Assembly (NCBI GenBank): GCA_037834085.1
Contig: JBBMKC010218353.1
Span: 1 to 34,134 of the forward strand
Source of the DNA: Bipalium vagum
Taxonomy: Eukaryota
Reading direction: 5' to 3'
Length of the DNA: 34,134 bases
Shown here: positions 1,045 through 34,024 of the stretch, in pieces
Numbering within the stretch: position 1 is the stretch's first letter
Layout of the letters: each line of letters opens with the position of its first letter
Program-made: the position numbers and the translations under genes
The notes under the pieces: generated by a model
The model's database searches: none
What the model was told of the DNA's origin: nothing
Seen by the model: only the letters and a program-made list of their open reading frames with translations

Positions 1045-4000
1045 GCTCTTTTGCTGTATGGTTCCGATGAACAGAAATCTTATTACTTACCCAAACTTGC
1101 AAGCGGAGAGTTACTCGGTGCTTTCTGTCTTACTGAAACGTCTAGTGGTAGCGATATGTTCAGTATGGAAACTATAGCATCTTTGAGTCCTTTTGAAGAT
1201 GGATATCTTCTACAAGGCACTAAAAATTGGGTTATCAATGGTCATGCTGCTGATGTTTACATAGTTTTTGCTATGACTAAAGATTCCATTCATGAGGTTG
1301 GCATAGGTTCAAGCCCACATATATCAATTATGTTTTTATCAGGGAGGTCGAGATTATATTACAGCATTGATCGTAGACAGATGTAGTGTAGGAGTTAAAA
1401 TTGGTGAAAAATACAACATTGATTGGTTGGAGAATTGCGAAGGTTCGTTTTTTGATGGAATCAAATTATTTTGAATTTAAAATTGTTAGTTGCTGACATT
1501 TCTTTCAATGAGACATTCATTCCAATTGATAAGGTGTTAGATGAAGCGAATGGTGGTTATAAAGTAAGTTTTATGTTTATTATTGATATTATCAATTTGA
1601 TTAGACTTATTATTTTATATTTTGGACTTCTTTACCATATGTTGATTTATTCGAAAAAATTAATAATTAAATTATTAGGTTAGTACATAAGTTCCCGCGT
1701 TTTTAAAAAATTATCATTCTTGTTATTTTTAGCTTTGTTTTGCTGAGCAAAAATAATTATTTTGAAAGCGCTTTTTTAAGCTACAAGCATGTAATCATTA
1801 TTCATTTAACAACTTAATTATACATTTATTTTTTAGCTCTACAAATTGGATATTCCAGGCAGCGAAAAAATTCATTTTCGGCATTTATTATATTTGGCCT
1901 TTGCCGTTATCAGAAAGCTACAGAAGCAGCACAAGACATTTGTGCTGTTTATGGAGCTAATGAAATAGGTGCGAGGACCGCTCAAGAATAGTACAACAAA
2001 TTCAAAAAGAGTAATTTTGATCTCGAAGATAAATTTCGCTCTGGTCGATCATCCGAATTCGACGAAGAACGTCTTCAGGAGCTTTTAAAGAAGAATGGTC
2101 GCCAAAAAACCAGAGAACTTGATGAAAAAATTTACTAGACTCATCCGACAATCCTCAGACACATTCATTCGATCGGCTTTGAGCAAAAATTTGTAGATTG
2201 GATACCTCATAAACTCAGTGAACAAGACAAAGAAAATAGTCTCCAAATCGCAGCACAACATCTTGCTCGGCACCGAGCGACATGCGGCCACACGGAATGA
2301 TTTCTGCAGAGAATCGTCACTGGATACGAGAAATGGTGTCTCTACTTCAATATGAGACAGAGGAAGGAGTGGGTCGCTAAAGGAGTCACGTCTAACCCAA
2401 GAGTAAAAAAAGAACTTCATCCCAAGAAAACAATGATATGTGTATGGTTGAACTGGGATGGTTTAGTACACGGTTTAGTACTTGAGAAAAATAAGACTAT
2501 TAAAAAAAAAACTCTTTGTAGCCAAGTTTCAAAGTGTGAACGAAGCTATCCAACTGAAAAGTTCAGATCGTCGCAGTCATGTCATTTTGCGTCATGACAA
2601 TGCACGGCCACACACAGCGAATATAGTGAAAATAGCCCTTCAAGAGCTCAAATGGGAGATTCTTCATCATCCGCCGTACTTTTCTGACCTTGTGCCAGCT
2701 GACTTTAACCTCTACCGCCCATTGTCCAATCAAATGAGGGGTGTGACATTCAATAACAAGGAGGATCTCAAAAACTGGCTCAACCAATTCTTCGAGATCG
2801 GACTGGCGATTTCTGGAGAAATGGTATCAAAAAATTGGCCGAGAGGTGGGAGCAGGTGGTGAACAATCACGGAGACTATATTACTGATTGATTTATTATT
2901 TTTAACATTAATAAAATAATAGTTGGTTTTCACAAAAAAATTTTCAATAAAAAAACTCGGGAACTTATGTACCAACCTAATATTTCTTACATATTTTATA
3001 ATTTATTTATTTTTATACTTTTACTTGTTTAGTGGATTTAGAATTATTGAATTTCTATTATTTTTAATAAATAATTTTTTTTAATATTATTATTAAAATC
3101 AATACTTTAATTTATTTCACATAATCCACGAAGCCTACTTTATTTTTTTGCATATTAATTGCTTACATTTGATTAATTTAAACAAAAATTACAATTTTTT
3201 CAAGAATTATTTCAAATGCGTTTAGATTTAATTTTTTTTAAAAAATCAATTCTCAATGTTTCCTCTTGTATGATAGACACGGTAAATCCCAATTCCAATT
3301 TAACGTTAATATTTTTTTAACCTAATTCCTTTTTCCTAACTATGATTTGTCTTAGATCGCCAATCATATCCAAAACAATGCCCGATTCATCGTGGCAGCC
3401 TGTATTTCTGGTATCACGCGGTACTTTATGAAAGATCTGATTACAAGAAAAAGTAACGGTCTCATTCCGAAAGATTCGTTGATTGATCATCTTATGAATG
3501 AGTGTATCACTTACTTGTATGCCATAGAGAGTGGGTTGTACTTTACCACGCGTTTTTCTGACTCCTATTTGATACCAGAGATCGAGCTGGAAAGCGCGGC
3601 GATTAAGGTTTTCGTTTCCAATTGATTTTTTTCTCAAATCACTCTCACAATGTTCAGGTATTCAGCATTGAAAGCGGTCTTAAATTGATGAAAAATTTCC
3701 AAAACATTTATTTGTTACTCGATCGATTCTCTACACCGAAATTTCAGAAATTATTTCACCGAGTAAATGGACTCCAGAGCTTTCTGGTAGGGAAAATAAA
3801 ATCGATCATCAGATTGTGACATGATTTACAACGTATGTCTAGGGTTCCAATTATTTCGTCAAGCTCTACATCGGAGGTACAATGGTGAAATTGTCGACCT
3901 TAAACATGATGGAGAACCAGAAAAAAATGAGACAACCATGGAATAATATTCCCTGGATGAAAGATGTTCTGAAGGATTCTTTGGAGCCAATCCATTGGAC

Positions 4001-9240: not shown

Positions 9241-9819
9241 ATTAGAAACTATTTATAAATGATTATATTTGAAGGATTTGGTACTATCAGTGTTCACAAT
9301 GAAATAATTATGTAATATGTATAAGTATAATGATATAATGTTTCTAATAAAATAGCTTTAAAAATTAATAGTTATCTTGCATTCAGCATATAAAACATTT
9401 AATTTTACAATTCATTCAAACTAATGACATACAATTAATTGATTTCGTTTCTTTTACTACAGAAATTTTTTAAAATTAATTTAAAATCATTTGTGTATGT
9501 TAACATAAATTAAAATTGAAATTATTAAAGTTTTAATGAATTTTTCTCATTTAATATTTATTGATCAAATCATTTAATAAAATTATTTTTCATCAAAAAA
9601 GAATTAATCGTAAAAATAATTTGAAACTAGTTTACAATTGAATAATGAATTAAAATTTAAAACTGCGAACAGACTTATTTATAAAAACATTGAAAGTTAA
9701 ATGTTTAAATCGGTTAAGATTCTTTAAAAGTTATTTAGGATAGTCTAATTACATGATTTTCTTAATTTTGTTTTAATTTATCTGAATAATTTTTTTAGTG
9801 TGATTTCCAAATTAATTGA

Positions 9820-10519
9820 ATGGAACTGGGTAAAATTGGGTCGAATTTGGTAAAAAGTGCCTTAGACTTAACCAAAACAACTCGCATTGATTCTTTTTGG
9901 AAGGTAAGTAAAAGATCTCTGAATCGTATATAAAATAATGTAAAGGAGTCGAGGTGCGTCATAACATTTTTCCGACGATTCGGATGATCTTACTGTAGAC
10001 TGGCTGCAAAGGTCCTCTCAGACATTACACCTATTCTGTTGTCACATAATGTGAGGAATATCGGAATCGGTTTAGAAGAACTGGGAGTTGAAGAATTTGT
10101 AGCCGGTCAATATTTTAATGGAGGTACGGTGATAAAAGCTGATCGAAGCACATTTTCTACCTCTATTTCCAGAGCTGTATGTAGATATTAACAAGAAATC
10201 GTTCGAACAACTCAATTTCAAAAACTATTCTCGCTTGGGATTGTTTGGTGCTCTGTTTTCCAGCTCTTCTCGGAACAATTACTCTGAAGCCCAGAAGTTT
10301 GGCGGAAATCTGAAAGGAGACGGATACCAGAACGGCGGAACGATCGTAACTGATGCCGGAGGATCCCTGCTCTATTTTTATAAGCAGGAAAACTTTGCTG
10401 ATCACGTCAAGAACGAGGACATTCTGAAAGCTCTGAACATCAGTGTAACTAGTAATGCTGATCCAGAGAAAGGTTCGCCAAAATTGTCTTGTGACGATAA
10501 CGCTTGTCATAGAAAATAG
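9820..10519 (+). CDS. PRXL2B: Selenoprotein U family (PRXL2B/FAM213B, prostamide/prostaglandin F synthase-like, AhpC-TSA_2 fold) with UxxC motif, 202 aa, Sec42
   Basis: Exons 9820-9903, 9946-10123, 10173-10519 (introns 42 and 49 nt, GT-AG) give MELGKIGSNLVKSA...FWKESRCVITFFRRFG[TGA]SYCRLAAKVLS...IGIGLEELGVEEFVAGQYFNGELYVD...GGNLKGDGYQNGGT...YKQENFADHV...SCDDNACHRK*. The only in-frame stop, TGA 9985-9987, aligns with the first Cys of the family RRFGCxxCR motif. SECIS in 3' UTR. Confidence 0.93.
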
Positions 10520-10530
10520 ATTATTAGGTT

Positions 10531-10598
10531 GTTAGATTCGGAAATGACTTTTCTGCTTGAAATTGTCTGAGCAGAAAATGATGTGAAAAGATTCTAAC
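10531..10598 (+). promoter_or_regulatory. Eukaryotic SECIS element (type I)
   Basis: Lower helix gttagattc/gattctaac. Core ATGAC (10544-10548) opposite TGAT (10579-10582). Upper helix ttttctgcttg/tgagcagaaaa (11 bp, two G-U). Apical loop AAAttgtc. Starts just after the stop codon of the TGA-containing gene. Confidence 0.92.
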
Positions 10599-22659: not shown

Positions 22660-25600
22660 TATTGAAGTTATATTCAGTAATCATGAATATTTTATTAAAT
22701 TTGGTTATAATTAGTAAGTGAAACAGTATTTCTTATTCATTATTTTTTTATAGTAAAAGGTTTTAATTTAAACAAAATATTGGTTTTTCAGACAGACAAA
22801 GCCTAACGTCTGAAGTATTCTATTGTCTATCGCAAAATGCAGAATTGAAATTTTCAAAGCTCAGCGAAATGAATATTGATCAAGTTAAATGGACCTTTAA
22901 TAATATTCCAATCAACGAAAATAACAGTAATATCCAATATATTATTTTACATAAATATAGCTTTTATATTTTTAATATTGTTTTGCAGAATTTGATATAC
23001 TCAATTATTATTATTTTATAAATATAATTATATATCAGTCTTTTCATTCGAACGATGATGGAGTTCAAGAAGTACTTCATGGGAAAAAATAATTGAGATT
23101 TCTGATTGAGGAGCACTGAAATTTTTATATCACTTGTTTCAATATTCCTTAAACACTTCAATAAAATTCAATTTTTTGTCATTTTATTAATAATTAATAA
23201 TTCCATCCGCCGTTTTGTTTAAATAAGAAACTTTCAAATCATGCCTGTAATTTATTTTGTCAATAATTAATAAAATAAATTTTATTATTTAAAATAGAAA
23301 AACTTTTTTCATTATTTTTCGCTGTAAGATTAAGTAAAAAATTAAAAAGACAATATATTTTATCACACTACTATGAAAATAAAATATAATAAAATAATAA
23401 AAAAATAATATAATAAATAAATAAATAATAAAATAAATTATAAGAAATAATGAAAATCTTTCATCTAGGGTCTAGGTAAATCATAAAAAATAATTTCTTT
23501 GAAAAAATATTAATATACGTCTTAATTTAATGTTAAAAAAAATATAAAAAATAATAAAATAATAATAATAATTATTATAAAAATAATAGGAATAATTAAA
23601 TATAAATTATTTGTAGACCAAGTTTTATTATTATATAAAAATCTAGAAGAGAAAAATTATTTTTGACAATGATGATGGAAAATAGTTCTTTATTCAAATA
23701 ATAAGATTTCAGATATATATAATTTTAATTTTATATATTTTAATTTTAATCAATTTTATTAAAGTTTTCGTCAATCGATAATTTGTTACTTTTAACTTAA
23801 ATCTCAACAAACAGATAAATAAATAAAAATATTTACTAATCACTAATATATTTTTACGTAAATATTTCTTTTTTATCATAATTAAAAATGATAACCAGTT
23901 TAATGTTTGATCCATTTACTTCAAAGATTTGCCGAAAATCCGAACCTTAGACAAAATTCTAATTAAACTTATTAATTAATTATTACAACTGAGGATTAAG
24001 CCTTTTTAATTAATGCTTCTTCGCATGATTTAAAGTCTACTTCGACGAAGAATTGATGGAGAAGATGTCTCTATGCACTTGACAAATGATTATGGAAATA
24101 AATAATCAACACTATGATTTCTTTTATTTTATTGAAATTTATGATAATGATATTTCTCAGGTAAATATCGAATTTTTACCACTGAATCTTATGGAATCTA
24201 TTTTGTGATCACAAATCTCGAAGAAAACGATTTCGGAGAATATTGTGCCCTGGACGAAAGAAAACAGGTTCTACAATCGTATATCATTGTTAAATCAGGT
24301 TTCCTTCACTAACCTTTAACTACGATTTCCATTGTTATATTTCAGATGCACCAACGTTCTTAAATTGTATTCCAAACCGAAGTTTGAATCTCCACGAAAA
24401 TCTATTTGTATCGGTGCAAATTGATGCTCAGCCAGCTCCAGATGTCGTTTGGAGAAGAAATTGGAAGAAAATATTTTCTAGCTATAGAACGGTCTTGGCG
24501 GAGGATAAGGAGAAATCTATGTATTCGTTATCAATTTCTAAATGTATGTTGTCGGATAGCGGTGAATACAGTATTCGAGCAGAAAACGTCGTAGGGTTTG
24601 CTGAAATGAAATTCACTTTACGTGTTGATGGTATGACCGGAAATAATGAAATGTCATTTCCCTTAAATTTTATTTAGCCCAACCAGAAAAAAGATCCATA
24701 CAAATCAATGAAGGAGATATCAATGACAGATACTACATCATGAAGCATTTATCGAGGTTAAAGGATAACATTATAAAAATGTTCATGTTAAGTTTTTTGA
24801 ACATTTGTTTTACAGAGGATCTTACAGTACATGTCAGATTTTGATTGAGAAGTCTACACAGAACGAATTTGTCGGAAAGTTCTTCGACATAAGCAATATG
24901 GGTATAGGGAAATCCGAATTCGAATGCATAAGAAATTTATATCAAAGAAATATAGTGGAAATATTTGATGCTATTATAATGCCAGATCAATATTTGGTTT
25001 TAATCTATGAAAAGTAAATCTAGATTATATGATCTTATGCATAGTTCATTGATTGATCGAATATTTGACAAATTATTAGGTTGTAAAGAAATAAACGGTG
25101 GTTTTTAACATTGAATTTGAAATGAAAAAATCACAGCTTAAACAAAATTTTATTTTTGAAAATAGAAACCATTACATTGTACACATATCTCCAAACGAGT
25201 CACAAGCTTATTTATCCAAATTTGATAATAATCTGAAATTCTAAGAGTTAAAAATATTCAAAGTCTTGAATGACAGCATTATCATTGGGGAAGGTTAGAA
25301 CAAATTTTCTCGATAACTCTCTTTTGAATGTCCTTAATTGTATGACTTTATCTCTTGATAGACAATTTAAATCATAGTTTGGATTATTTTGAAAACATTT
25401 TTTTGTTTTAAAGTGTTTAGAAAAAAAATTCTCAATAATCAAGAATGATTGAAATAACAAAACAATTAATTAATTATATACAATATCTATACATGATTCC
25501 ATTAGTTTCAGTAAAAAATATTATGAAAAAGAAAAGACACAATAAACGAGTCTAAGTCAATATTCTTCATGCTAATGTGAAACCACTCACAGCAAGTATT

Positions 25601-31600: not shown

Positions 31601-32798
31601 ATAATTACGATAAATCTTTATTTAATCTATGTAGCAGTACACTAGCAAAATCACTTTGCGAGAAAATGTGATCAATAAAAGTAGAAAATAAATCAATCAA
31701 AATTCTAATTCAACTGTCACATAAAAAAATTCAATCAAATAAATATGAATTGTTAAGATATTGATCAAAGTCCAAATGGATTCTCTCATAAATGACAAAA
31801 ACTGTAAGGACTCTGTTGACTCCTGTCGAATAGAAAATATCATAATCTTAAAATCTTACAAAAATATTTGAATATAATCTTCTTCCGACTTAGTTCGTAA
31901 TATACAGACATTTTTTCAGACGTAAAATGTAATTTTAAAGTCTAAAATTTTCTGGGCAGTCCATTGAGGACTCCGTCGACTCTTACATTGACTACTTAGT
32001 CATATACCAATATTTTTATCTGAAGTCAATTCACTTTTTAGGCAAAAATTTAGTAATTGGCTACTAACTACGGAACTGATTTAATCTTAACAATTCAACA
32101 TTGACAAGATTAGAAAAGCTCCAAAAATATTTTATAATTATTATTAATTATTTAATTATTATTAATTTTAATTTTTAATTATTATTATTATTATTAAAAT
32201 TTAATAATAATTTCTTCAGTTATGAAAGATGTGATCCATTAAAAGATAACTCGGTGGATGACGGCTCTTCGGAACGAAAAGAAATCTTTCCAAGTGTAGA
32301 TAGAAATACAGTCAAAAACACTAAGAAAGGTTTGCTAATTATATTAGTAACACATTTAAATTATTATATTAGAACTTTTATTTACTGTTCCTTTAAAAGA
32401 CCAAACTTTTAAAGGAGGATCAATTGGCAGTAGAATTACAGTTACCCTGACTTGTCAGCTAGCTCTTTTAGGAAGCGAACCGATTAGCATTTCTTGGTAT
32501 AAGAATCAAGAACTGTTGTCGGACGATTCAAAAATAAAACTTGAAGTCATAAAAGGAGGCTTCCTTTCATGCACTATTTTAAGTGCATCTGACAATGATG
32601 TAGGCATATACAAATGTGTTGCTAGATGTCATTCTCTTAGAGCTGAAACCTGTGCAAGATTGATACTTGGAGATATTCCAACCCCTCCAGAACAACTTTT
32701 GGTATATTATATAAATGAACAAGAGGTCTTATTGAAATGGAATCCCTATTTTTTGGCGATCGATGACATCATCTATAGGGTTGATGTGAAAGTCATTG
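18287..32798 (+). CDS. unc-89: Obscurin/UNC-89/SPEG-like muscle protein, partial: Fn3-Ig-Ig-kinase1 (pseudokinase)-interkinase-Ig-Fn3
   Basis: Phase-consistent exons 18287-18613 (Fn3), 18665-18709, 22792-22926 and 24161-24298 (Ig), 24346-24630 (Ig), 24678-24756, 24816-25013, 25997-26135, 26182-26381, 26436-26552, 30978-31104 (CAMK/MLCK-type kinase: FVGK, HLDIKPEN, APE, DMWSIG, HQWF), 31148-31314, 32220-32329, 32373-32798 (Ig + TCARLILGDIP + Fn3 start). This domain order matches the UNC-89/obscurin dual-kinase region. Both gene ends are missing. Confidence 0.85.
19550..20079 (+). mobile_element. hAT (Charlie/Buster-like) 3' end fragment
   Basis: FSHLTILNTKRPERPRNVEEKMRIAISNLRLDIEKLCKNHQLEVSN* resembles the Buster/Charlie C terminus. 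Terminal aagtttaagaaccactg (reverse complement cagtggttcttaaactt) is a typical Charlie TIR. Confidence 0.75.
20092..21313 (+). mobile_element. Near full-length defective mariner in obscurin intron
   Basis: About 31-bp imperfect TIRs ttgggttgtctaaaaagtttccgccgatttt / aaaatcggcagaaacattttggacaactcaa, TA flanks. Motifs KPKLTPRKVMLYIW, HDDNGRLH, LLHPPYSADFAPSDYYLFRSL. Confidence 0.92.
22583..22657. repeat. (TAA)n microsatellite, about 25 units
   Basis: Perfect trinucleotide run. An imperfect related tract lies at about 22250-22350. Confidence 0.95.
25076..25897 (+). mobile_element. Internally deleted mariner in obscurin kinase intron
   Basis: Degenerate TIRs ttaggttgtaaa.. / ..gttacaacttaa. Motifs ILHANVKPL (HDNARPH-like), SPYSP, YLFRML, NNGKYID*. 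Confidence 0.7.
27060..27700 (-). mobile_element. Decayed mariner 5' half
   Basis: Minus strand: HISHFMLYEFK.GSNAT, WFRKGNLSL, VSHDLT, FFK*IVIEYEK*IIYENP. Confidence 0.7.
27965..29211 (-). mobile_element. Full-length defective Mos1-like (mauritiana-type) mariner
   Basis: TIRs ttaggtgtacaacaatgactccggctt / ttagatgtacaactatgactccagctt, TA flanks, 1247 bp. Motifs KKTAAETYRLL, FLHRVITGDEK, KVMLCIWWDQKGVIYYE, HPPYSPDIAPSDYH. Contains stops and frameshifts. Confidence 0.95.
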
Positions 32799-34024
32799 GT
32801 AATACTGAGTTATTTTTGTAAAATAAATTTTAAAGCTCCACAAAATGTTTGAGTACTACTTTAAAAATGTGGAAATAATTTTTAACAAAAAATTAAATAA
32901 ATTTTAAGTAAAATTTTCACCTGATTTTAATAATAAAATAGATATTTATGTTACTGTTTTTCTATACTTTGAAAGAAATTATAAAATTAAAAATTGAAAC
33001 AAATTTTTAGTTAAACAAAACAATTTAAAGCAGATTTTTTATTAAAAAATAATTTTGTGAAAATTAATATTTTCCATTCAATTGATAAATATGGAAATAG
33101 ACAAACATTCTTAAATGTATTGATATCTGTTTTGTGATATACTGGGTGCCTAGGGTATTTGAGGACTTAAGTTTAATGTCAACACAATTTTGTCTGCATA
33201 TTAGTTATTGACACGCTATCGATATTGTTCGAGTTCATAAGTCTCAATTGAACGTAATATTCATTTCACATAAAATTTGAGAAGTTAAAAAACGCTCTCC
33301 CTTTATTTAATTTTTAAAAAAATAATGATGTGAATATATTTTCAAAAAATTTTCATTATAAAACTAATTAATTATATATTATAAAAATTAATATTATTAA
33401 TTATTATTATTAATATTATTATTATTACCCATTGAAGTTATTTTAAATTCTCAACATCATTAATATTTTGAATCGAGTTTCACATGCACACACTACACAA
33501 TGGCAAAATGTTATTTTTAGGAAATTCTCATTTTTATTATAAAACATTATGAAATATTACATATCATAAATGTACAAATAAAATACTATAATGTATATAT
33601 ATTTATTTATATATATAATGAAATCTCATCTAATTACACTTATTTTGTTAAAAAATATTGGCTGAAATATAAAATATAAAAGTTTGTTAACTTGCTTTTG
33701 TTAGCAACTGTAACTAACGAATATTAAATACTGTATATCAAGCCCAAATTTTATATTGATTTTTCGTATTAATTATCTTCCCAAGTACGGAATTAAGAAA
33801 TATAACGAATCAATTTGTAATACAAAATTATAGAATATATAATTTAGTAAAAACAATTGCAAAACTAATACTTGAATTGGAAAATAATACTAAGGAAAGT
33901 ATAATTACCCATCCTGTTACAGAAATAAGGAAAATCTTTCGGATTTGGCAAAATCATAAGGAGTTATTTCTCTGAATAAGTCTTACTACACCTTTTAATT
34001 TAATTTTTTTCTAATACATAGTAT

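What the first reader, a model, noticed from the sequence alone, without database searches (positions are those of the whole stretch)
9820..10598. Hidden UGA-recoded selenoprotein: Sec-containing SelU/PRXL2B with UxxC active site
Seen: a clean 3-exon, 202-aa frame has a single internal TGA (9985-9987, codon 42) in RRFG-*-SY-C-R, exactly where the family has the first redox Cys. Family similarity continues on both sides and a SECIS follows the TAG. Established: UGA plus a 3' UTR SECIS directs selenocysteine insertion; the SelU/FAM213 family has both Sec and Cys forms, and mammalian PRXL2B (prostamide/prostaglandin F synthase) is a Cys form. Inference: this organism makes a Sec form of the PRXL2B-type enzyme and has a working Sec pathway. 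Standard gene callers would truncate it; the ORF track shows only the last 94 aa.
Basis: partly seen in the sequence, partly recalled or inferred. Interest (0 to 1): 0.9.

Follow-up and report, generated by a model that had tools for sequence, protein, structure and literature searches.

The report
Selenocysteine form of PRXL2B/SelU gene
This is a real three-exon animal gene for a small thioredoxin-fold redox enzyme of the SelU/PRXL2B type that uses selenocysteine where humans use cysteine. Gene callers miss it, but selenocysteine forms of this family are already described in invertebrates, a planarian flatworm included.

Summary
Exons 9820-9903, 9946-10123 and 10173-10519 (GT-AG introns of 42 and 49 nt) give 202 codons, with one in-frame TGA at 9985-9987 (codon 42).

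- **Homology:** Cys-form homologues and human prostamide/prostaglandin F synthase (PDB 9US9) align on both sides of the TGA and place it on the catalytic first Cys of RRFG-C-xx-C-R.
- **No other start:** no Met lies downstream of the TGA.
- **SECIS:** a canonical form-1 stem-loop (AUGA 10544-47, AAA 10560-62, GA 10580-81) starts 11 nt after the TAG. It is the only strict hit in the 34-kb window.
- **Sec machinery:** the assembly holds tRNA-Sec(TCA), SepSecS, eEFSec and SPS.
- **Other selenoprotein genes:** three GPx genes and a Sep15 gene carry TGA at their Sec sites.
- **Other species:** an unrelated environmental homologue has TGA at the same site.

Transcription, splicing and Sec insertion could not be tested, because no RNA run was available.

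It is not new in kind. Sec-form SelU3 (PRXL2B type) was reported in invertebrates in 2012. A Sec SelU was reported in the planarian Schmidtea mediterranea in 2013. Unchecked notes from this scan call this genome a planarian. The verdict is a correct, unannotated new member of a known kind, of low interest.

The parts
9820..9903 (+). Exon 1 (codons 1-28, start ATG at 9820, preceded by an in-frame TGA)
   Evidence: Translation. It aligns to the N-termini of homologues P0025, P0016, P0048 and P0008. The GTAAGT donor at 9904 is confirmed.
9904..9945 (+). Intron 1 (42 nt, GT-AG, contains an in-frame TAA)
   Evidence: A 14-codon gap appears in all four tblastn alignments.
9946..10123 (+). Exon 2 (codons 29-87 plus the first base of codon 88); holds the redox motif
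   Evidence: Translation. Pfam PF13911 profile positions 2-37 match. PDB 9US9 residues 47-89 align to the part after the TGA.
9985..9987 (+). In-frame TGA, codon 42, read as selenocysteine (U42)
   Evidence: It aligns to the first Cys of RRFG-C-xx-C-R in Cys-form homologues, which is Cys44 of human PGFS (PMC12938796). An identical base call stands in the Logan contig.
9985..9996 (+). U-S-Y-C redox motif (U42, C45), preceded by R38-R39-F40-G41
   Evidence: In the human enzyme Arg40/Arg41 and Cys44/Cys47 form the active site (PMC12938796).
10124..10172 (+). Intron 2 (49 nt, GT-AG, phase 1)
   Evidence: The Pfam profile continues from position 37 to 40 across it. The tblastn frame shifts from +1 to +2 at this point.
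10173..10519 (+). Exon 3 (codons 88-202 and the TAG stop at 10517-10519)
   Evidence: Translation. PF13911 matches at E 9.9e-9. PDB 9US9/9USA residues 91-187 align at E 1.7e-10. There are 273 library hits.
10490..10507 (+). C-terminal C-DDNA-C pair (C194, C199), a tail motif shared by many homologues
   Evidence: A C-x(2-5)-C lies in the last 18 residues of 43 of the 150 listed homologues.
10531..10598 (+). SECIS element, form 1. Helix I is 10531-10539 paired with 10590-10598. The AUGA is at 10544-10547. Helix II is 10549-10559 paired with 10568-10578. The apical AAA is at 10560-10562 and the 3' GA at 10580-10581.
   Evidence: The MFE fold gives both helices. It is the only hit of a strict SECIS pattern scan on both strands of the window, against 0.4 hits per shuffled window. 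It is the best hit under relaxed settings. The same scan finds SECIS-like elements after the Sep15 and one GPx gene of this genome.

Best explanation
The locus is an intact, single-copy, three-exon gene for a 202-residue thioredoxin-fold oxidoreductase of the SelU/PRXL2 family (Pfam AhpC-TSA_2). It is closest to the PRXL2B/SelU3 type (prostamide/prostaglandin F synthase).

How I think it is made: codon 42 is UGA. The form-1 SECIS stem-loop, 11 nt into the 3'UTR, recruits the SBP2/eEFSec/Sec-tRNA complex. The ribosome then inserts selenocysteine at UGA-42 and terminates at the TAG.

How I think the enzyme works: U42 is the attacking residue of a U-x-x-C centre. It takes the place of catalytic Cys44 of human PGFS and is flanked by the conserved Arg-Arg pair. 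Its selenolate reduces a peroxide or endoperoxide substrate. The resulting selenenic acid is resolved by C45 to a selenenylsulfide, which a thioredoxin-type reductant recycles.

Shown here: the gene structure, the homology, the TGA-to-Cys alignment, the SECIS-like structure, and Sec machinery plus other TGA-bearing selenoprotein genes in the same assembly.

Inferred: transcription, splicing, Sec insertion, the catalytic cycle and the substrate. Whether PGH2 is the natural substrate in this animal is open.
For: - **Gene model and frame:**
- **Domain:** PF13911 is colinear across exons 2 and 3.
- **TGA on the catalytic Cys:** it aligns with the first Cys of RRFG-C-xx-C-R in P0025, P0016, P0048 and P0008, with 34-45% identity running through it.
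- **Human enzyme:** PGFS 9US9 aligns to exon 2 after the TGA (residues 47-89, E 4.8e-7) and to exon 3 (residues 91-187, E 1.7e-10), so U42 corresponds to Cys44. Cys44 is the catalytic thiolate and Cys47 its partner (PMC12938796).
- **No other start:** there is no Met codon after the TGA in exons 2 or 3.
- **SECIS:**
- **Sec system, all but the tRNA on AT-rich contigs like the window:** tRNA-Sec at 75.9 bits with anticodon TCA; SepSecS in 4 exons, best E 2.6e-28; eEFSec domain 4 at 63.8 bits; SPS/selD.
- **Other selenoprotein genes:** three GPx genes with TGA at the N-[VT]-A-[SC]-K-U catalytic site and a Sep15 with C-G-TGA.
- **Same-site TGA elsewhere:** an unrelated homologue seen in three environmental samples has RRFG-TGA-MFCR. 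Among the library hits, at least five start just after this position and three show W there, the usual signs of mis-called Sec forms.
- **Base call:** an identical contig in the one public run that holds it, depth about 27.
Against: - There is no RNA evidence.
- Rfam's SECIS_1 model gives no match at E up to 10. It is equally silent on the GPx loci and on the environmental Sec homologue, so this is weak evidence.
- The fold z-score of the SECIS region is only -1.8.
- The tRNA-Sec lies on a 440-nt contig with 38-42% GC, unlike the 27.7% of the window. Scan notes mention foreign rRNA in this assembly, so that one gene might belong to another organism.
- PSTK was not found. The TIGR03574 hit is KTI12. 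SBP2 was not searched.
- The substrate is unknown.
Confidence: 0.88

Rival explanations
1. It is a selenoprotein as described, but it is not a prostaglandin F synthase in this animal. It would act as a general selenol-thiol peroxidase or protein-disulfide/peroxide reductase, and the PGFS name is only inherited from the mammalian orthologue. This rival concerns function only. It is compatible with the gene-level reading, so its confidence is not exclusive of the best explanation.
For: SelU function is called unclear in the literature (PMC3473315). Names such as 'prostamide/prostaglandin F synthase' on invertebrate hits are automatic. Identity to the human enzyme is moderate. No prostaglandin pathway gene was examined here.
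Against: The Arg-Arg-x-Gly-[C/U]-x-x-Cys-Arg active-site string, which the human structure paper ties to binding of the PGH2 peroxide, is fully kept.
Confidence: 0.45
2. It is a pseudogene or null allele. A Cys codon (TGT or TGC) mutated to TGA, so the product is a 41-residue stub.
For: A single-base change would be enough. There is no expression data.
Against: The rest of the frame is intact across three exons, with canonical splice sites and conserved residues to the last codons. A canonical SECIS sits just behind the stop, where only 0.4 such hits are expected by chance in the whole window on both strands. The genome uses Sec elsewhere. Sec forms at this exact site occur in other species and are published (PMC3473315).
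Confidence: 0.04
3. The TGA is a sequencing or assembly error.
For: The assembly is very fragmented, with 272,664 contigs. The only other data come from what is probably the same sample.
Against: An independent assembler gives the same letters over the whole gene at depth about 27, with no variant. An error would not explain the SECIS.
Confidence: 0.02
4. The contig belongs to another organism in the sample (prey, commensal or parasite), not to the nominal genome. The gene would then say nothing about the host's selenoproteome.
For: A scan note reports nematode-like 28S rRNA in this assembly (unchecked). The tree does not place the gene with the one named flatworm sequence.
Against: The 34-kb contig has 27.7% GC, like the SepSecS, GPx, Sep15, eEFSec and KTI12 loci of the assembly. 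It carries ordinary animal genes with short introns. The tree is unresolved, so it says nothing either way.
Confidence: 0.05

Closest known systems
Sec-containing SelU3 of non-deuterostome invertebrates (Jiang, Ni and Liu 2012, PMC3473315)
   Same: It shares the PRX-like2/AhpC-TSA_2 fold, the homology to prostamide/prostaglandin F synthase, Sec at the first position of the redox motif and an AUGA-type SECIS. The paper counts 8 SelU3 proteins, of which 3 are in Cys form, all in deuterostomes; the remainder would be Sec forms.
   Different: This is a different species. I could not align this gene to those sequences because none was available by reference, so orthology is inferred from shared best matches.
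Sec SelU of the planarian Schmidtea mediterranea, with Cys homologues in Schistosoma and Taenia (Jiang et al. 2013, PMC3828610)
   Same: If this genome is a planarian, as unchecked scan notes say, this is the expected orthologue: one Sec SelU in a free-living flatworm. The Cys form in a fluke (P0048, Trichobilharzia, RRMGCKFCR) fits the paper's picture.
   Different: The paper's passages read here do not say which SelU subfamily the planarian gene belongs to.
Human PRXL2B, prostamide/prostaglandin F synthase (PDB 9US9/9USA; PMC12938796)
   Same: Both are about 200 residues with no signal peptide. Both have the same RRFG-x-xx-CR active-site string, and the alignment runs from the N-terminal region to about residue 187.
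   Different: The human enzyme has Cys44 where this gene has Sec. The gene's pieces are roughly 35-40% identical to it. Human PGFS activity on PGH2 has not been tested for any Sec form.
Vertebrate SelU1 (PRXL2A; Sec in fish and birds) and PRXL2C/SelU2
   Same: They belong to the same superfamily and also show Sec/Cys interchange.
   Different: This gene's best named matches are all PRXL2B-type. The genome's second AhpC-TSA_2 gene (contig C199230, L022) has the R-H-F-L-C string I recall from PRXL2C, with Cys, and it is clearly a different paralogue.

Membership tests
SelU / PRXL2 family (Pfam PF13911 AhpC-TSA_2, PRX-like2) | The AhpC-TSA_2 domain is detectable and colinear | tested here: met
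   Exon 3 scores 36 bits against a cut-off of 27, E 9.9e-9, on profile positions 40-113. Exon 2 after the TGA matches profile positions 2-37 weakly.
SelU / PRXL2 family (Pfam PF13911 AhpC-TSA_2, PRX-like2) | A [C/U]-x-x-C redox motif follows the first beta strand (RRxG-[C/U]-xx-C-R) | tested here: met
   The window reads RRFG-TGA-SY-C-R. In the 20 listed homologues with the motif, 17 have Cys and 3 have W at that position.
PRXL2B / SelU3 subfamily (prostamide/prostaglandin F synthase type) | The gene is closer to PRXL2B than to PRXL2A or PRXL2C | tested here: inconclusive
   All named best hits are PGFS-type and the only PDB relative is PGFS. The paralogue L022 is PRXL2C-like. No labelled PRXL2A sequence was available, and the exon-3 tree is unresolved.
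PRXL2B / SelU3 subfamily (prostamide/prostaglandin F synthase type) | The enzyme reduces PGH2 or prostamide H2 to the F2alpha form | not testable with these tools
   This needs an enzyme assay.
Eukaryotic selenoprotein gene | An in-frame UGA aligns with Cys (or Sec) of homologues, with conservation on both sides | tested here: met
   
Eukaryotic selenoprotein gene | A SECIS lies in the 3'UTR: AUGA/GA quartet, helix II of about 9-12 bp, unpaired AA in the apical loop, and helix I | tested here: met
   The fold is and the pattern scan with shuffles. The caveats are that my scanner is home-made, Rfam SECIS_1 is silent as it is on control loci, and SECISearch3 was not available.
Eukaryotic selenoprotein gene | The Sec decoding machinery is present in the same genome | tested here: met
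   Found: tRNA-Sec TCA, SepSecS, eEFSec domain 4 and SPS. PSTK was not found and SBP2 was not searched. The tRNA-Sec contig is short and richer in GC.
Eukaryotic selenoprotein gene | A spliced mRNA carries both the UGA and the SECIS, and Sec is inserted in vivo | not testable with these tools
   No RNA run is on record for this DNA. Labelling or mass spectrometry is needed.

The most novel reading that the evidence does not exclude
The Cys pair at the very C-terminus (C194-x4-C199 here; a C-x(2-5)-C within the last 18 residues of 43 of 150 homologues) could be a mobile second redox centre. It would recycle the U42-C45 selenenylsulfide, much as the C-terminal arm of thioredoxin reductase shuttles electrons. 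The Sec form in free-living flatworms would then be a high-turnover version of a two-centre enzyme that parasites downgraded to Cys. I did not find this tail discussed in the human PGFS structure paper.
Probability: 0.12. Interest if true: 0.45.

Novelty: new member of a known kind. Interest (0 to 1): 0.18.

Why it matters
Practically, it is a correct annotation that standard gene callers miss. They report only a 94-residue tail or nothing. With the GPx, Sep15, SepSecS, eEFSec and tRNA-Sec loci, it shows that this genome needs selenoprotein-aware annotation.

Biologically, it adds one more data point to a published picture: free-living flatworms keep Sec in SelU, while flukes and tapeworms use Cys. 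A natural Sec form of a PGFS-type enzyme could serve as a handle for finding the family's real substrate. It opens no new question by itself.

Tried and rejected
- **Rfam SECIS_1:** cmscan at E up to 10 gave no SECIS match over 9400-11200. It also gave none on three GPx loci and the environmental Sec homologue, so the blank carries no weight. The whole window at gathering score gave nothing.
- **PSTK:** the single TIGR03574 hit is a 287-aa single-exon KTI12, so PSTK remains unfound.
- **Selenoprotein S:** PF06936 gave no match, and the tool's controls rang nowhere. The Rdx family gave only partial exons without the Sec region.
- **Protein searches with exon 3:** The search for homologous proteins returned only two short fragments. 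The protein atlas gave only the family name.
- **Tree:** an exon-3 tree of 95 sequences leaves the gene in an unsupported group near spider sequences and not with the fluke sequence. It is unresolved and I did not use it.
- **SECIS in the environmental homologue:** my scanner found none in L024-L026. The scanner is crude, so this is no evidence against a SECIS there.
- **RNA support:** the only run holding the locus is kept as contigs, is not on record as RNA, and is probably the assembly's own source.
- **Organism:** it could not be named from protein hits. The KTI12 best named hits are only about 50% identical.
- The exons were handled one by one by reference. The 13 residues of exon 2 before the TGA are too short for the protein tools, so I judged them only through tblastn of homologues against the window DNA.

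Full report
**1. Observation**

- ATG at 9820, with an in-frame TGA directly before it.
- Exon 1 at 9820-9903.
- A 42-nt GT-AG intron at 9904-9945, which contains an in-frame TAA.
- Exon 2 at 9946-10123.
- A 49-nt GT-AG intron at 10124-10172.
- Exon 3 at 10173-10519, ending in TAG.

The exons add up to 609 nt, which is 202 codons plus the stop. The single internal stop is TGA at 9985-9987, codon 42, in RRFG-*-SY-C-R. The mechanical ORF list shows only the last 94 codons.

**2. Is the model real?**

Pfam AhpC-TSA_2 (PF13911) matches exon 2 after the TGA (profile 2-37) and exon 3 (profile 40-113, 36 bits against a cut-off of 27). The match runs colinearly across intron 2.

A full scan of 1.84 billion representative proteins with exon 3 found 273 relatives, the best at 42-52% identity. 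I ran tblastn of four full-length Cys-form relatives against the window DNA in a script. It recovers exon 1, a 14-codon gap exactly at intron 1, and exon 2. In every case the TGA is aligned to the first Cys of RRFG-C-xx-C-R. The alignment then moves into exon 3 in the shifted frame.

Human prostamide/prostaglandin F synthase (PDB 9US9) aligns to exon 2 after the TGA (residues 47-89) and to exon 3 (residues 91-187). A close Cys-form relative aligns to it from residue 6 to 187 at E 7e-47. U42 therefore corresponds to Cys44. The structure paper describes Cys44 as the thiolate that attacks the PGH2 peroxide. Cys47 is its partner, and Arg40 and Arg41 shape the site (PMC12938796). All of these residues are kept here.

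No Met codon lies downstream of the TGA in exons 2 or 3. A product that starts after the TGA is therefore not an option.

**3. SECIS**

The MFE fold of 10526-10606 gives the expected architecture.
- Helix I: 10531-10539 paired with 10590-10598.
- Internal loop, then AUGA at 10544-10547 opposite GA at 10580-10581.
- Helix II: 11 bp.
- Apical loop beginning AAA at 10560-10562, 12 nt after the AUGA.

A strict pattern scan that I wrote finds this as the only hit on either strand of the 34-kb window, where shuffled windows give 0.4 hits. Under relaxed settings it is still the best hit. The same scanner also finds SECIS-like elements just behind the stop of this genome's Sep15 gene and downstream of one GPx gene.

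Rfam's SECIS_1 model does not report it. It also misses those control loci and the environmental Sec homologue, so the blank is uninformative. The fold z-score is modest at -1.8. SECISearch3 was not available.

**4. Does this genome use Sec?**

The assembly has 440 Mb in 272,664 contigs. It holds:
- a tRNA-Sec at 75.9 bits with anticodon TCA;
- a four-exon SepSecS;
- the eEFSec-specific fourth domain, at 63.8 bits;
- SPS/selD exons.

Three GPx genes carry TGA at the catalytic position. A Sep15 gene reads C-G-TGA. These loci have 25-30% GC, like the window at 27.7%.

There are two caveats. The tRNA-Sec sits on a 440-nt contig with 38-42% GC. PSTK was not found, because the one candidate is KTI12.

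**5. Base call and copy number**

The one public run holding this DNA gives an identical contig across 9700-10700 at depth about 27, with no variants. It is probably the assembly's own source, so it rules out an assembler artefact and not a library-level error. The gene is single-copy in the assembly. No RNA run was offered, so transcription and splicing are inferred from homology only.

**6. Comparison with other species**

The best library hit is a 167-residue call that starts M-F-C-R. On its contigs, in three samples, it is preceded in frame by ...FFMRRFG-TGA. That is an independent Sec form at the same site. Among the 150 listed hits, 17 show Cys at the site and 3 show W, which suggests TGA read as Trp by a gene caller. 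At least five begin right after the site.

Named relatives are annotated prostamide/prostaglandin F synthase (spider, mayfly, Ciona) or are unnamed (annelid, fluke). The fluke protein has Cys.

**7. What is known**

Jiang et al. 2012 (PMC3473315) describe three SelU subfamilies. SelU3 is the PGFS/PRXL2B type. They report 8 invertebrate SelU3 proteins, of which 3 are in Cys form, all in deuterostomes; the remainder would be Sec forms.

Jiang et al. 2013 (PMC3828610) report one Sec SelU in the planarian Schmidtea mediterranea and Cys homologues in Schistosoma japonicum and Taenia solium.

Unchecked notes by other agents of this scan call this genome a planarian. I could not verify the species. 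Composition, short introns, animal-type neighbours and the rich selenoprotein set are compatible with that. If it is a planarian, this gene is the expected orthologue.

**8. Mechanism**

The shown parts are the UGA-42, the 3'UTR SECIS and the decoding machinery. The inferred parts are as follows. SECIS-directed Sec insertion gives a U-S-Y-C centre. The selenolate of U42 reduces a peroxide or endoperoxide. C45 resolves the selenenic acid to a selenenylsulfide, which a thioredoxin-type system reduces. Whether PGH2 is the substrate in this animal is open. I give about even odds that the enzyme works as a more general peroxide or disulfide reductase.

**9. Rivals**

A nonsense pseudogene (0.04) and a sequence error (0.02) both fail to explain the SECIS, the intact frame and the recurrent same-site Sec in other taxa. 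A contaminant origin of the contig (0.05) would not change what the gene is.

**11. Verdict**

The gene is an unannotated new member of a known kind of selenoprotein. Confidence is 0.88 that it is a genuine Sec-encoding SelU/PRXL2B-type gene. Interest is low, at 0.18.

Noticed in passing
window 10490-10507, and homologues P0001-P0150: The protein ends in C-DDNA-C-HRK. A C-x(2-5)-C pair in the last 18 residues recurs in 43 of the 150 listed homologues from many animals. The human PGFS structure paper does not mention it. It could be a second redox or metal site.
   Followed up: partly
G000 contig C199230, L022:1200-1800 (+): This is the second AhpC-TSA_2 gene of the genome. It is PRXL2C-like (IIIFLR / HFLCFTTSDYVEDL ... 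QQGGGAMVVGPG) and has Cys, not Sec, at its motif. The TGA flagged by the search lies in an intron.
   Followed up: partly
G000 contigs C199131 (L016), C223928 (L017), C209931 (L019), C183253 (L030): Three glutathione peroxidase genes have TGA at the catalytic site, and a Sep15 gene reads C-G-TGA. The Sep15 SECIS-like element starts about 20 nt after its stop, the same tight spacing as in the SelU gene.
   Followed up: partly
G000 contig C4233, L001:67-150 (+): The only tRNA-Sec found (anticodon TCA) sits on a 440-nt contig whose flanks have 38% GC, well above the 25-30% of the other loci. It may come from a GC-richer region or from another organism in the sample.
   Followed up: no
window 1051-1386 and 2482-2862 (+): An acyl-CoA dehydrogenase exon (Acyl-CoA_dh_M) lies upstream. 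About 1.1 kb downstream of it is an ORF with a weak DDE_3 match and the look of a mariner/Tc1 transposase remnant (HDNARPH...), on the same strand, possibly inside an intron of that gene.
   Followed up: no
window 18304-18630, 24384-24677, 32516-32821 (+); N run 18088-18229: Exons encoding FN3 and Ig I-set domains suggest a large cell-adhesion or muscle-type Ig/FN3 gene over the second half of the window. An assembly gap of 142 N was left untouched.
   Followed up: no
G000 contig C3488, L023:1264-2127 (-): This is an intronless 287-aa KTI12 gene. The best library hit is 67% identical but unnamed, and named animal KTI12 proteins are about 50% identical or less. Public named proteomes therefore hold no close relative of this species.
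   Followed up: no
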